NCBI GenBank assembly: GCA_002269645.1
Contig: NIVC01001184.1
Location: 124,001 to 188,000 of the forward strand
Source of the DNA: Macrostomum lignano
Taxonomy: Eukaryota
Length of the DNA: 64,000 nt
Reading direction: 5' to 3'
In this document: positions 23,501-26,500 of the stretch, piece by piece
How the letters are laid out: each line of letters opens with the position of its first letter
How positions within the stretch are numbered: the stretch's first letter is position 1
The notes under the pieces: generated by a model
What the model was told of the DNA's origin: nothing
What the model saw: the letters and a program-made list of their open reading frames with translations, nothing else
Databases searched by the model: none
Program-made: the position numbers and the translations under genes

Positions 23501-26500
23501 ATGCTGTGTAGTTACTTTCAAAATGCAAATCAATATTTTCTGAGTTAGGGTGTTGGCGCCAATTCAAATGACAAAGAAAGATCAGCGATCCAAAGTGACA
23601 GTCTTGTCCTAACTCATAAGTTTTCTCCTGCTTTTTACAAATAATCAATTTCTGCTCGGATGAAATAGCCATGTTTTTGAACCGACAGATATAAAATAAT
23701 GAATAGGGTTATTAGATGAAGGAATTATTAATATATTTAAAACCGTCATTTAGCTAGCTATCTCTCTTTCTCAGTTGAAATGGCTTCGCCTAGCAGGGTA
23801 GCAGCATGCAATCAGTCGTCCGCCACATTTTAACAACTAAATTCACTGCAGATGTTTGTGGGGCATTGGGGCGGCATCATAAACTACATCAAAGGATTGG
23901 GGTGGGGCATTGGGGCGGCATCATAAACTACATCAAAGGATTGGGGTGGGGCATTGGGGCGGCATCATAAACTACATCAAAGGATTGGGGTGGGGCATTG
24001 GGGCGGCATCATAAACTACATCAAAGGATTGGGGTGGGGCATTGGGGCGGCATCATAAACTACATCAAAGGATTGGGGTGGGACAGCGGCGGCATCATAA
24101 ACTACATCAAAGGATTGGGGTGGGGCAGTGGCGGCATCATAAACTACATCAAAGGATTGAGGTGGGGCAGTGACGGCAACATAAACTACATCAAAGGATT
24201 GGGGTGGGGCAGCGGCGGCATCATAAACTACATCAAAGGATTGGGGTGGGACAGCGGCGGCATCACAAACTACATCAAAGGATTGGGGTGGGGCAGTGGC
24301 GGCATCATAAACTACATCAAAGGATTGAGGTGGGGCAGTGGCGGCATCAAAAACTACATCAAAGGATTGGGGTGGGGCAGTGACGGCATCATAAACTACA
24401 TCAAAGGATTGGGGTGGGACAGCGGCGGCATCATAAACTACATCAAAGGATTGGGGTGGGGCAGCGGCGGCATCATAAACTACATCAAAGGATTGGGGTG
24501 GGGCAGCGGCGGCATCATAAACTACATCAAAGGATTTGGGTGGAGCAGCGGCGGCATCATAAACTACATCAAAGGATTGGGGTGGGTCAGTGGCGGCATC
24601 AAAAACTACATCAAAGGATTGGGGTGGGGCAGTGGCGGCATCATAAACTACATCAAAGGATTGGGGTGGGGCAGTGGCGGCATCATAAACTACATCAAAT
24701 GATTGGGGTGGGTCAGTGGCGGCATCATAAACTACATCAAAGGATTGGGGTGGGGCAGTGACGGCATCATAAACTACATCAAAGGATTAAGGTGGGTCAG
24801 TGGCGGCATCATAAACTACATCAAAGGATTGGGGTGGGGCAGTGACGGCATCATAAACTACATCAAAGGATTGGGGTGGGACAGCGGCGGCATCACAAAC
24901 TACATCAAAGGATTGGGGTGGGGCAGTGACGGCATTACAAACTACATCAAAGGATTGGGGTGGGGCAGTGACGGCATCACAAACTACATCAAAGGATTGG
25001 GGTGGGGCAGTGGCGGCATCACAAACTACATCAAAGGATTTGGGTGGGGCAGCGGTGGCATCATAAACTACATCAAAGGATTGGGGTGGGGCAGCGGCGG
25101 CATCATAAACTACATCAAAGGATTTGGGTGGGGCAGCGGCGGCATCATAAACTACATCAAAGGATTGGGGTGGGGCAGCGGCGGCATCATAAACTACATC
25201 AAAGGATTGGGGTGGGACAGCGGCGGCATCACAAACTACATCAAAGGATTGGGGTGGGGCAGTGGCGGCATCACAAACTACATCAAAGGAATGGGGTGGG
25301 ACAGCGGCGGCATCATAAACTACATCAAAGGATTGGGGTGGGACAGCGGCGGCATCATAAACTACATCAAAGGATTGGGGTGGGACAGCGGCGGCATCAT
25401 AAACTACATCAAAGGATTGGGGGTGGGGCAGTGGCGGCATCATAAACTACATCAAAGGAATGGGGTGGGACAGCGGCGGCATCATAAACTACATCAAAGG
25501 ATTGGGGTGGGACAGCGGCGGCATCATAAACTACATCAAAGGATTGGGGTGGGACAGCGGCGGCATCATAAACTACATCAAAGGATTGGGGGTGGGGCAG
25601 TGGCGGCATCATAAACTACATCAAAGGATTAGGGTGAGACAGCGGCGGCATCATAAACTACATTAGAGGATTGGGGTGGATCAGCGGCATCATAGACTAC
25701 ATTAAAGGATTGGGGTGGGACAGCGGCGGCATCATAAACTCCATTAAAGGATTGGGGTGGGTCAGTGGCGGCATCATAAACTCCATTAAAGGATTGGGGT
25801 GGGTCAGTGGCGGCATCATAAACTACATCAAAGGATTGGGGTGGGGCAGTGGCGGCATCATAATCTACATCAAAGAATTGGGGTGAAACGGCTGACAGTA
25901 AAACCAAGACTGCAAAGCCAGATGGGCCCAAAGTGCAGCGGTATATTAATGCTACCTATTCATAGCGTTGCACATCTCAATGACCACAAGCACGCTGAGC
26001 GCCATGGTCATGGGCTTTGGGTGGGAGAATATAGCGCAGTCAATGCCTTCAAAGCGCGACTCCTGCGCGAGGCACTGAGCCTGATGTGTCTGGAAACGAA
26101 TGGTGGAGAGGAAATTTAATTATCGAGTCCAAAACGCCTCACCTGTTCATTGCGTTGAACATTTCAATGAGCACTAGGACAGACAGGGCCATGGTCATTG
26201 GCTTGGGATTGTTGAATATCTTGCAGTCGATGCCTGCGAAGTTCTGCTCTTCGGCCAAGCACTGCATGTGGTGCGTCTGTAAGGGCGCGACTCCACGATT
26301 GAAGTAAGGAGACAGACAGACAGACAGACAGACAGACAGACAAACAGACAGACAGACAGACAGATCGGCTAAGTGAATGGCCGATATGTATTGTAATAAA
26401 CAAAAGAAAGCTTAAGTTGAAACTTCATTTACAGAATTGATTTAAAACTTTCATTTGACTTTTTCAGCTACTTTTACTGGTGGAATGTGAATAAAATTAA

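What the first reader, a model, noticed from the sequence alone, without database searches (positions are those of the whole stretch)
25956..26276. SERCA carries a tandem pair of mutually exclusive exons encoding the luminal L7-8 loop and Ca2+-binding helix M8
Seen: two paralogous exons of exactly 134 nt, both phase 0 to 2 with canonical AG/GT, lie 53 nt apart. They encode [44 protein letters not shown] and [44 protein letters not shown]. Either one alone restores the 1000-aa frame; both together (268 nt) shift it. Both keep the luminal Cys pair and the Glu equivalent to site-I ligand E908, while DNA has diverged at synonymous sites, which suggests both are under selection. Established: known SERCA isoform diversity is mostly at the C-terminus, and L7-8 with its disulfide is the luminal redox/chaperone-regulated surface. 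Inference: this gene switches its luminal regulatory face and M8 environment (F vs C next to the Glu) by splicing. I do not recall this being described for SERCA.
Basis: partly seen in the sequence, partly recalled or inferred. Interest (0 to 1): 0.85.

Follow-up and report, generated by a model that had tools for sequence, protein, structure and literature searches.

The report
Ancient alternative exon pair in SERCA
The calcium pump (SERCA) gene of the flatworm Macrostomum lignano carries two interchangeable copies of one exon, a pair shared with snails, oysters, annelids, brachiopods, ribbon worms and schistosomes, so these animals can make two pumps that differ in the loop facing the calcium store.

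Summary
The window is Macrostomum lignano. A SERCA gene lies on the minus strand (38224-20494, 1000 aa). Two 134-nt exons with AG/GT borders sit 53 nt apart: 8A at 26276-26143 and 8B at 26089-25956. Either one alone keeps the frame; both together, or neither, give a premature stop. The pair is not peculiar to this gene. The same two exon types, in the same order and both 134 nt, occur in a second M. lignano SERCA gene and in a monogenean, a trematode, a snail, an annelid and a brachiopod. A cestode also has both in order, but its 8A is interrupted by an assembly gap. Public annotations of schistosomes, Littorina, oysters and two nemerteans hold isoform pairs identical except for this exon. A rotifer locus and a priapulid locus have one copy, and arthropod isoforms do not vary here. 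Both exons are under strong purifying selection: between the M. lignano paralogs, 8A has 15 synonymous and 1 non-synonymous difference, and 8B has 19 and 0. The conserved A/B differences lie in the luminal M7-M8 loop (SERCA1a 873, 874, 879, 884, 893). The F/C next to the Glu is lineage-specific. I found no paper describing this, although databases already hold the isoforms. Use of 8B in this particular gene was not shown.

The parts
20494..38224 (-). Coding span of the SERCA gene (P-type IIA Ca2+-ATPase) of Macrostomum lignano. CDS exons: E1 38224-38107, E2 38028-37928, E3 37368-36874, E4 34272-33562, E5 29517-29062, E6 28806-28446, E7 27531-27170, 8A or 8B, E9 23308-23191, E10 21811-21694, E11 20522-20494.
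   Evidence: tblastn mapping and splice-site reconstruction. The translated model is identical to P0248 (UniProt A0A1I8J4B9) over 1000 aa. It is 100% identical (BLASTP, rounded) to Mlig008428g4, from which it differs at 2 residues, and about 80% identical to trematode SERCAs.
27170..27531 (-). Constitutive exon 7 (M5-M7 and the start of L7-8), whose donor joins to 8A or 8B
   Evidence: ends ...NYYQL followed by GT
26277..27169 (-). Intron 7/8A, 893 nt, largely a 28/85/114-nt minisatellite
   Evidence: No block conserved with the paralog's intron.
26143..26276 (-). Exon 8A, 134 nt, phase 0 to 2, the 'A type': [44 protein letters not shown]
   Evidence: It is 86% identical to the upstream exon of Cichlidogyrus and Trichobilharzia. 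It is the exon used in all annotated models of this gene.
26090..26142 (-). 53-nt intron between 8A and 8B, GT...AG
   Evidence: The homologous intron is 66 nt in the paralog, 50 and 78 nt in two parasitic flatworms, and 122-699 nt in the annelid, snail and brachiopod.
25956..26089 (-). Exon 8B, 134 nt, phase 0 to 2, the 'B type': [44 protein letters not shown]
   Evidence: It is 89-91% identical to the downstream exon of Cichlidogyrus and Trichobilharzia. Its protein sequence is identical in the M. lignano paralog despite 19 synonymous differences.
23309..25955 (-). Intron 8B/9, 2647 nt, dominated by a 42-nt unit repeated about 48 times (23870-25885)
23191..23308 (-). Constitutive exon 9 (end of M8 and M9: SLSENQSL...), the acceptor for either exon 8
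20494..20522 (-). Terminal coding exon E11 (..D|VGQLPKEID*). The alternative is read-through of the E10 donor at 21693, giving ..[16 protein letters not shown].
   Evidence: Only the spliced form is on record.

Best explanation
Exons 8A and 8B are an ancient pair of tandemly duplicated, mutually exclusive exons of the SERCA Ca2+ pump gene. Splicing joins exon 7 to one of them and that one to exon 9. This gives two 1000-aa pumps identical except for 11 residues within SERCA1a positions 871-914. Each exon is 134 nt (3n+2), so including both or neither shifts the frame into an early stop. Such mRNAs would be non-productive and probably removed by nonsense-mediated decay. The duplication predates the split of flatworms, molluscs, annelids, brachiopods and nemerteans, and both copies have been kept under strong purifying selection since. 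The A type resembles the single exon of outgroups; the B type is the derived copy. The conserved differences lie in the luminal M7-M8 loop around the Cys876-Cys888 disulfide. A has H873, M874 and E879 and no acidic residue at 884. B has Q873, A/S874, Q879, often E884 and often H893. The likely function is to give the pump two luminal faces, differing in the acidic patch that in mammalian SERCA2a tunes Ca2+ release into the store and the response to store load, or in the docking of luminal partners. Shown: the anatomy, frame logic, orthology, selection, and annotated isoform pairs in relatives. Inferred: alternative use at this exact locus, a role for NMD, and the functional consequence.
For: Anatomy and frame logic. 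The organism and gene are M. lignano SERCA, and my model is identical to A0A1I8J4B9. The same pair in the same order, both 134 nt with AG/GT, is found in the M. lignano paralog (L005), Cichlidogyrus (L002), Trichobilharzia (L004), Biomphalaria (L001), Capitella (L006) and Lingula (L007). Dibothriocephalus also has both in order, but its 8A is interrupted by an assembly gap. Every upstream exon is closer to other species' upstream exons than to their downstream exons. The reverse holds for every downstream exon except the oyster B exon, which ties at 0.72. Mean identities between species are A-A 0.78, B-B 0.77 and A-B 0.67. Same-gene isoform pairs with 100% identical flanks and only exon 8 swapped exist for Littorina X1/X2, Tubulanus X1/X2, Lineus X1/X2, Trichobilharzia regenti, Schistosoma bovis, S. 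haematobium, S. rodhaini, Heterobilharzia and oysters. Database entries I take to be cDNA-derived carry A (Pinctada) or B (S. japonicum C1LE79 and Q5DF96, Tridacna, Lumbricus). Intron-less transcript-sized contigs encode full-length A-type (P0137) or B-type (P0130) flatworm-like SERCAs. Selection between the window and the paralog: 8A has 15 synonymous and 1 non-synonymous difference, 8B has 19 and 0; across phyla, synonymous sites are saturated while pN is 0.02-0.26. In the paralog, both an A model (A0A1I8HXM0) and B models (Mlig019375g6/g1) are annotated. Residue mapping to SERCA1a 871-914 is ungapped. Acidic residues of this loop (SERCA2a E877/D878/E883, equal to SERCA1a 878/879/884) were shown experimentally to tune luminal Ca2+ handling (PMC11826342). 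879 and 884 are among the A/B-discriminating columns.
Against: No transcript or protein on record uses 8B in this particular gene: all six models in its 90% cluster carry 8A, and exact look-ups of 8B versions of two of them (the window's own model and Mlig008428g2) found nothing. Most isoform pairs in relatives are automated predictions whose RNA support I could not inspect. No conserved intronic docking or selector element was found, and inverted repeats near the pair are at chance level, so what enforces single inclusion is not shown. Absence in outgroups rests on one rotifer locus, one priapulid locus and arthropod protein isoforms. The functional difference between the isoforms is untested in any species, as far as I could find.
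Confidence: 0.85

Rival explanations
1. Subfunctionalised paralogs: after the SERCA gene duplicated in the Macrostomum lineage, this copy came to use only 8A and the other copy mainly 8B. Exon 8B in the window would then be an unused relic.
For: All annotated models of this gene carry 8A, and the GenBank models of the paralog carry 8B. The 8B form of this gene is not in the protein collection.
Against: 8B in the window has intact AG/GT and an open frame, and it shows 0 non-synonymous against 19 synonymous differences from the paralog's 8B. Likewise, 8A of the paralog differs from the window's 8A by 1 non-synonymous and 15 synonymous changes. With synonymous divergence above 1, an unused exon would have decayed. 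The paralog also has an annotated A-type model, A0A1I8HXM0.
Confidence: 0.1
2. Both exons are included together through an internal donor in 8A, giving a longer protein, as in the UniProt models A0A1I8JJ10 and A0A1I8HT55 (paralog), the Echinococcus multilocularis model P0135 and the Batillaria model P0160.
For: Those models read ...[11 protein letters not shown]|THQAQCL..., which is part of 8A fused to 8B.
Against: The fusion would insert a second half-loop after a truncated M8 and would break the ten-helix topology that aligns without gaps to SERCA1a. The models come from automated annotation. Species with better-supported annotation (RefSeq, schistosome assemblies) have clean single-exon isoforms of equal length.
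Confidence: 0.03
3. Assembly artefact or recent local duplication with no biological meaning.
For: The region is extremely rich in tandem repeats.
Against: The two copies are only 71% identical at DNA level, with 16 synonymous codon differences. The pair recurs in seven other independently assembled genomic loci from four phyla.
Confidence: 0.01

Closest known systems
C-terminal alternative splicing of SERCA (vertebrate SERCA2a/2b; Artemia, C. elegans and Pinctada SERCA isoforms)
   Same: It is the same gene family, one gene gives several pumps, and spiralian genes combine it freely with the exon-8 choice. For example, Littorina X1/X2 and Tubulanus X1/X2 share a hydrophobic tail, while other isoforms of the same genes have short tails. 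The window gene also has a spliced ending and a read-through ending.
   Different: C-terminal splicing adds or removes a tail or an eleventh helix through an optional donor. Here an internal segment (L7-8 and the start of M8) is substituted by a homologous one. Reviews and papers I could read describe only the C-terminal kind for invertebrate SERCA (PMC3527596, PMC6987452).
Tandem duplicated exon substitution (mutually exclusive homologous exons) in ion-transport genes, such as the PMCA family, ryanodine receptor and voltage-gated Ca2+/Na+ channels
   Same: Adjacent homologous exons of equal length and phase, ancient, strongly conserved, and altering a short membrane-proximal segment of a transporter (PMC9741552).
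   Different: SERCA/ATP2A is not mentioned in the main text of that survey, which is built on human, fly and worm annotation. This event is confined, as far as sampled, to Lophotrochozoa, which that survey touches only in passing (molluscs, for one calcium-channel event).
C. elegans mutually exclusive exon clusters policed by frame and NMD or by short intervening introns
   Same: Non-3n exon length makes double inclusion and double skipping frame-shifting, as in 14 of 19 non-3n worm clusters that depend on NMD. The intervening intron is short in flatworms (PMC4165533).
   Different: The 50-78-nt flatworm introns exceed the under-40-nt limit found in C. elegans. The homologous intron is 122-699 nt in the annelid, snail and brachiopod, so steric exclusion cannot be the shared mechanism. 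NMD dependence is untested here.
Luminal regulation of mammalian SERCA2 through the M7-M8 loop (Cys875-Cys887 disulfide; acidic residues E877/D878/E883)
   Same: It is the same loop. Both spiralian exons keep the two cysteines, and two of the three mutated acidic positions (SERCA1a 879 and 884) are the ones that differ systematically between A and B.
   Different: In mammals the loop is invariant within a gene and is modulated by partners or redox state. Here the loop sequence itself is switched by splicing. No functional data exist for the spiralian isoforms.

Membership tests
SERCA (P-type IIA Ca2+-ATPase) | Domain set Cation_ATPase_N, E1-E2_ATPase, Cation_ATPase, Hydrolase/HAD, Cation_ATPase_C | tested here: met
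   Precomputed Pfam hits PF00690, PF00122, PF13246, PF00702 and PF00689 on P0126 (the same gene family member, differing from my model at 2 residues) and on all top hits.
SERCA (P-type IIA Ca2+-ATPase) | Catalytic motifs DKTGT, TGDN and GDGVND, and Ca2+-site residues including the M8 Glu (E908) | tested here: met
   The translated model contains [33 protein letters not shown] and NLVTDGLPA. The M8 Glu aligns to E908 of SERCA1a in an ungapped 164-residue alignment.
SERCA (P-type IIA Ca2+-ATPase) | Orthology to characterised SERCAs rather than PMCA or SPCA | tested here: met
   75-81% identity over the full length to entries named SERCA from Schistosoma, Clonorchis, Pinctada, Tridacna and arthropods. 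The best solved structures are SERCA1a and SERCA2, E about 1e-71.
Mutually exclusive tandem-duplicated exons | Adjacent homologous exons of the same length, same phases and canonical splice sites | tested here: met
   134 and 134 nt, AG/GT, 71% nucleotide and 75% amino-acid identity, 53 nt apart.
Mutually exclusive tandem-duplicated exons | Exactly one exon is needed for the reading frame | tested here: met
   A alone or B alone gives the full ORF. A+B gives a stop after residue 939, and neither gives a stop after residue 924.
Mutually exclusive tandem-duplicated exons | Both copies maintained by purifying selection and conserved as a pair in orthologues | tested here: met
   dN/dS is about 0.008 for 8A and about 0 for 8B between the M. 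lignano paralogs. The pair is present in the same order in seven other genomic loci; in one of them, Dibothriocephalus, 8A is interrupted by an assembly gap.
Mutually exclusive tandem-duplicated exons | Mature transcripts carry one exon or the other, and both kinds are observed | tested here: inconclusive
   In relatives, isoform pairs with identical flanks and cDNA-type entries of both types exist. For the window's own gene only 8A models are on record, and the 8B form is absent from the collection. No RNA-seq reads could be examined.
Mutually exclusive tandem-duplicated exons | A mechanism that enforces exclusivity (steric hindrance, competing RNA structures, spliceosome incompatibility or NMD) | tested here: inconclusive
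   Frame-shift, and hence possible NMD, follows from the sequence. Both introns are GT-AG, which argues against the AT-AC form of U2/U12 incompatibility. No conserved intronic pairing elements were found. The intron is short only in flatworms.

The most novel reading that the evidence does not exclude
A splicing switch more than half a billion years old, shared by flatworms (including schistosomes), molluscs, annelids, brachiopods and nemerteans, gives SERCA two alternative luminal M7-M8 loops. The switch moves the loop's acidic residue from position 879 (A type) to 884 (B type). The result would be pumps with different luminal Ca2+ release, store-load sensing or redox-partner control, used in different tissues. 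This would be a mode of SERCA regulation with no counterpart in vertebrates or arthropods and, as far as I could find, never described.
Probability: 0.4. Interest if true: 0.7.

Novelty: new member of a known kind. Interest (0 to 1): 0.55.

Why it matters
SERCA is one of the best-understood membrane pumps, and its known isoform diversity is C-terminal. An internal, homologous-exon switch in the only large luminal loop, kept since the lophotrochozoan ancestor, is a natural experiment. Evolution has preserved two versions of the very segment, the disulfide-bridged acidic M7-M8 loop, that recent mammalian work links to luminal Ca2+ sensing and redox control. Comparing the two isoforms gives a direct, testable handle on what that loop does. 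It also matters for parasitology: schistosome SERCA exists in two luminal forms. It matters for annotation too, because several public models wrongly fuse both exons. The kind of event, mutually exclusive tandem exons, is well known, and the isoforms are already in databases, so this is an undescribed instance rather than a new principle.

Tried and rejected
(1) Two homologue searches with a 164-aa C-terminal fragment (B and A versions) returned only short fragments and no M. lignano protein. They did reveal the two recurrent exon types. The full-length search identified the organism.

(2) Genomic look-ups for Elysia (P0102), Watersipora (P0220) and Tachypleus (P0201) found no record, so bryozoan and chelicerate loci were not examined.

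(3) The apparent decay of 8A in Dibothriocephalus latus is an assembly gap of Ns.

(4) I searched for conserved intronic docking or selector elements. blastn of the window against the paralog shows conservation only in exons and in the short middle intron. Inverted repeats of 10-19 nt around the pair are what chance predicts, and most lie in minisatellites. Competing RNA structure is neither supported nor excluded.

(5) Steric hindrance as the general mechanism is rejected. The middle intron is 122-699 nt in Capitella, Biomphalaria and Lingula. By my reading of the exon 9/10 hit coordinates, Cichlidogyrus splices an intron of about 37 nt elsewhere in the same gene.

(6) An exact look-up of the 8B isoform of this gene found nothing in the collection.

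(7) A bootstrap NJ tree timed out. I replaced it with identity matrices and diagnostic columns.

(8) Seven literature searches that paired SERCA or Ca2+-ATPase with mutually exclusive exons, alternative splicing, molluscs, Schistosoma, SMA1 or invertebrates found no description of an internal SERCA exon switch. The library is incomplete, so this is not proof of absence.
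Full report
**1. What is in the sequence**

Reading the minus strand of 25800-26450 shows two exons. Exon 8A is 26276-26143 and exon 8B is 26089-25956. Each is 134 nt, each is preceded by AG and followed by GT, and a 53-nt GT...AG intron (26142-26090) separates them.
- In frame 0 they encode [44 protein letters not shown] and [44 protein letters not shown]. 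The other two frames of both contain stops.
- They share 95/134 nt and 33/44 residues. Of 44 codons, 17 are identical, 16 differ synonymously and 11 non-synonymously.
It has 11 coding exons from 38224 to 20494, all AG/GT.
- With one exon 8 the product is 1000 aa. With both, the frame hits a stop after residue 939. With neither, it stops after residue 924.

**2. Whose gene it is**

A full-length search gives hits of 90-100% identity to Macrostomum lignano proteins. My model is residue-for-residue identical to UniProt A0A1I8J4B9 (P0248), and to Mlig013231g2 from its residue 8 onward. The window is therefore from the free-living flatworm M. lignano, and the gene is a bona fide SERCA.
- The Pfam domain set is complete.
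- DKTGT, TGDN, GDGVND and the Ca2+-site motifs are present.
- The C-terminal 164 residues align without a gap to SERCA1a 831-994.
- That alignment places exon 8 at SERCA1a 871-914.

**3. The pair is old and shared**

Fragments returned by the first search already fell into two recurring types, THHMQC.AEP..F and THQ(S/A)QCL(A/V)Q(E/D)..F, across flatworms, molluscs and unnamed transcripts. I fetched genomic loci around homologues and ran tblastn with both peptides. In each of the following loci the A-like exon lies upstream of the B-like exon, between the exon 7 and exon 9 homologues. Both are exactly 134 nt with AG/GT.

| Locus | Species (group) | Middle intron (nt) |
|---|---|---|
| window | M. 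lignano | 53 |
| L005 | M. lignano, second SERCA gene | 66 |
| L002 | Cichlidogyrus casuarinus (monogenean) | 50 |
| L004 | Trichobilharzia regenti (trematode) | 78 |
| L006 | Capitella teleta (annelid) | 122 |
| L001 | Biomphalaria glabrata (gastropod) | 624 |
| L007 | Lingula anatina (brachiopod) | 699 |

- The cestode Dibothriocephalus latus (L003) has both too. Its 8A is interrupted by an assembly gap, not by decay.
- Across 12 gene pairs, every A exon is more similar to other species' A exons than to their B exons. The reverse holds for B exons, except that the oyster B exon ties at 0.72. Means are A-A 0.78, B-B 0.77 and A-B 0.67. So there was one duplication before these phyla split, not repeated duplications or gene conversion.
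- Outgroup exons are closer to A (0.67) than to B (0.61), so B is the derived copy.
- One bdelloid rotifer locus and one priapulid locus have a single copy. In the priapulid it is fused to the preceding exon.
- Arthropod isoform pairs (Hetaerina, three aphids) are identical in this segment.
- The event therefore looks lophotrochozoan, with the caveat of thin outgroup sampling.

**4. Evidence that both are used**

Public annotations contain isoform pairs that are 100% identical in the flanks I compared (400 residues upstream, 75 downstream) and differ only in exon 8:
- Littorina saxatilis X1/X2;
- Tubulanus X1/X2;
- Lineus X1/X2;
- Trichobilharzia regenti A0AA85KAQ8/A0AA85KDA6;
- Schistosoma bovis, S. 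haematobium, S. rodhaini and Heterobilharzia americana;
- an oyster (X4 against X5-X12).

Entries whose accessions or names I take to be cDNA-derived carry A (Pinctada fucata) or B (S. japonicum C1LE79 and Q5DF96, Tridacna, Lumbricus). Full-length SERCAs encoded on 3.8-4.3-kb, hence intron-less, environmental contigs carry A (P0137) or B (P0130).

Selection is the strongest argument for M. lignano itself.
- Between the window and its paralog, 8A shows 15 synonymous and 1 non-synonymous difference.
- 8B shows 19 synonymous and 0 non-synonymous differences.
- Under neutrality, about 70 non-synonymous changes would be expected in each.
- Across phyla, synonymous sites are saturated while the peptides stay 60-90% identical.

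For the paralog, both an A model (A0A1I8HXM0) and B models (Mlig019375g6/g1) are annotated. For the window's own gene, all six models use 8A, and the 8B form is not in the 15-billion-protein collection. Alternative use at this very locus is therefore a strong inference, not an observation.

**5. How exclusivity may be enforced**

- The 3n+2 length makes double inclusion and double skipping frame-shifting. In C. elegans this class of exon pair largely depends on NMD (PMC4165533).
- The middle intron is short in flatworms (50-78 nt) but 122-699 nt elsewhere. By my reading of the hit coordinates, the Cichlidogyrus gene also splices an intron of about 37 nt. Steric hindrance is therefore not the shared mechanism.
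- Introns flanking the pair share no conserved block between the two M. lignano genes. Local inverted repeats are at chance level. I have no evidence for docking or selector RNA structures.

**6. What changes in the protein**

In the window, 9 of the 11 differences lie in the luminal loop and 2 lie in M8 (906 L/V, 910 F/C). The M8 differences are not consistent across taxa: position 910 is F/C here, L/C in the paralog, F/L in schistosomes and L/L in molluscs. The conserved discriminators are all in the loop.

| SERCA1a position | A type | B type |
|---|---|---|
| 873 | H (12/12) | Q (10/12) |
| 874 | M (12/12) | A or S (12/12) |
| 879 | E (12/12) | Q (12/12) |
| 880 | P, E, K or H | E or D |
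| 884 | never acidic | E in 7/12 |
| 893 | N, D or A | H in 9/12 |

A 2025 study showed that SERCA2a loop residues E877/D878/E883 (SERCA1a 878/879/884) tune Ca2+ release into the lumen and the dependence of pumping on store load. It also showed that the C875-C887 disulfide is needed for function (PMC11826342). Two of those three positions are exactly the ones swapped between A and B. The best functional guess is therefore two luminal faces with a relocated acidic residue. That could alter luminal Ca2+ handling or the docking of luminal partners. This is inference, not data.

**7. Comparison with what is known**

Papers I could read describe only C-terminal splicing for invertebrate SERCA (PMC3527596, PMC6987452). 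A survey of tandem-exon substitutions names the PMCA family, RyR and voltage-gated channels, and neither ATP2A nor SERCA occurs in its main text (PMC9741552). Seven literature searches found no description of this event. The isoforms are, however, already present in RefSeq, GenBank and UniProt. Some automated models (A0A1I8JJ10, A0A1I8HT55, the E. multilocularis and Batillaria models) wrongly fuse the two exons.

**8. Verdict**

- The pair is a real, ancient, selectively maintained pair of mutually exclusive exons: a new, apparently undescribed member of a known kind of splicing event.
- It has a plausible and testable link to luminal regulation of the pump.

Noticed in passing
L007 (Lingula anatina) 33178-33291 and 34006-34098: The exon just upstream of the 8A/8B pair is also tandemly duplicated in Lingula. 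It encodes the M7 end and the start of L7-8 (..VYVG..WWFMVYDKGP.LN.YQL). By my count both copies are about 86 nt, with AG/GT borders. This is a candidate second mutually exclusive pair, not seen in the other loci.
   Followed up: partly
window 21694-21640 and 20522-20494 (minus strand): The SERCA gene has two possible C-termini. Splicing E10 to E11 gives ..[13 protein letters not shown], which matches database proteins. Read-through of the E10 donor gives ..[16 protein letters not shown], a short hydrophobic tail reminiscent of the extra-helix tails of other invertebrate SERCAs. No protein with the read-through tail was seen.
   Followed up: partly
window 20578-37857, introns of the SERCA gene: The introns are packed with micro- and minisatellites. 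Examples are (GACA)n at 34316-34970, a 42-nt unit x48 at 23870-25885 directly downstream of 8B, a 181-nt unit x13 at 29521-31890, a 12-nt unit x59 at 27678-28393 and a 22-nt unit x31 at 32834-33510. They create long spurious ORFs on both strands.
   Followed up: no
window 50636-54774 and 60327-63468 (minus strand): Two neighbouring genes encode SH3 and tyrosine-kinase domains, that is Src-like non-receptor kinases, probably tandem paralogs. An SH2 hit was found in the first only (Pfam hits).
   Followed up: partly
P0127, P0254 (M. lignano paralog), P0135 (Echinococcus multilocularis), P0160 (Batillaria): These public gene models contain part of 8A fused to 8B (..MALSVL|THQ..). They are almost certainly annotation errors caused by the tandem exon pair.
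   Followed up: partly
L005 versus window: The two M. lignano SERCA genes are 93% identical in protein but have synonymous divergence above 1 in exon 8 and no alignable introns. They are therefore old paralogs rather than recent genome-duplication copies. Exon 8A and 8B peptides (98% and 100% identical) are more conserved between them than the neighbouring constitutive segments compared, the last 40 residues of exon 7 and exon 9 (85%).
   Followed up: partly
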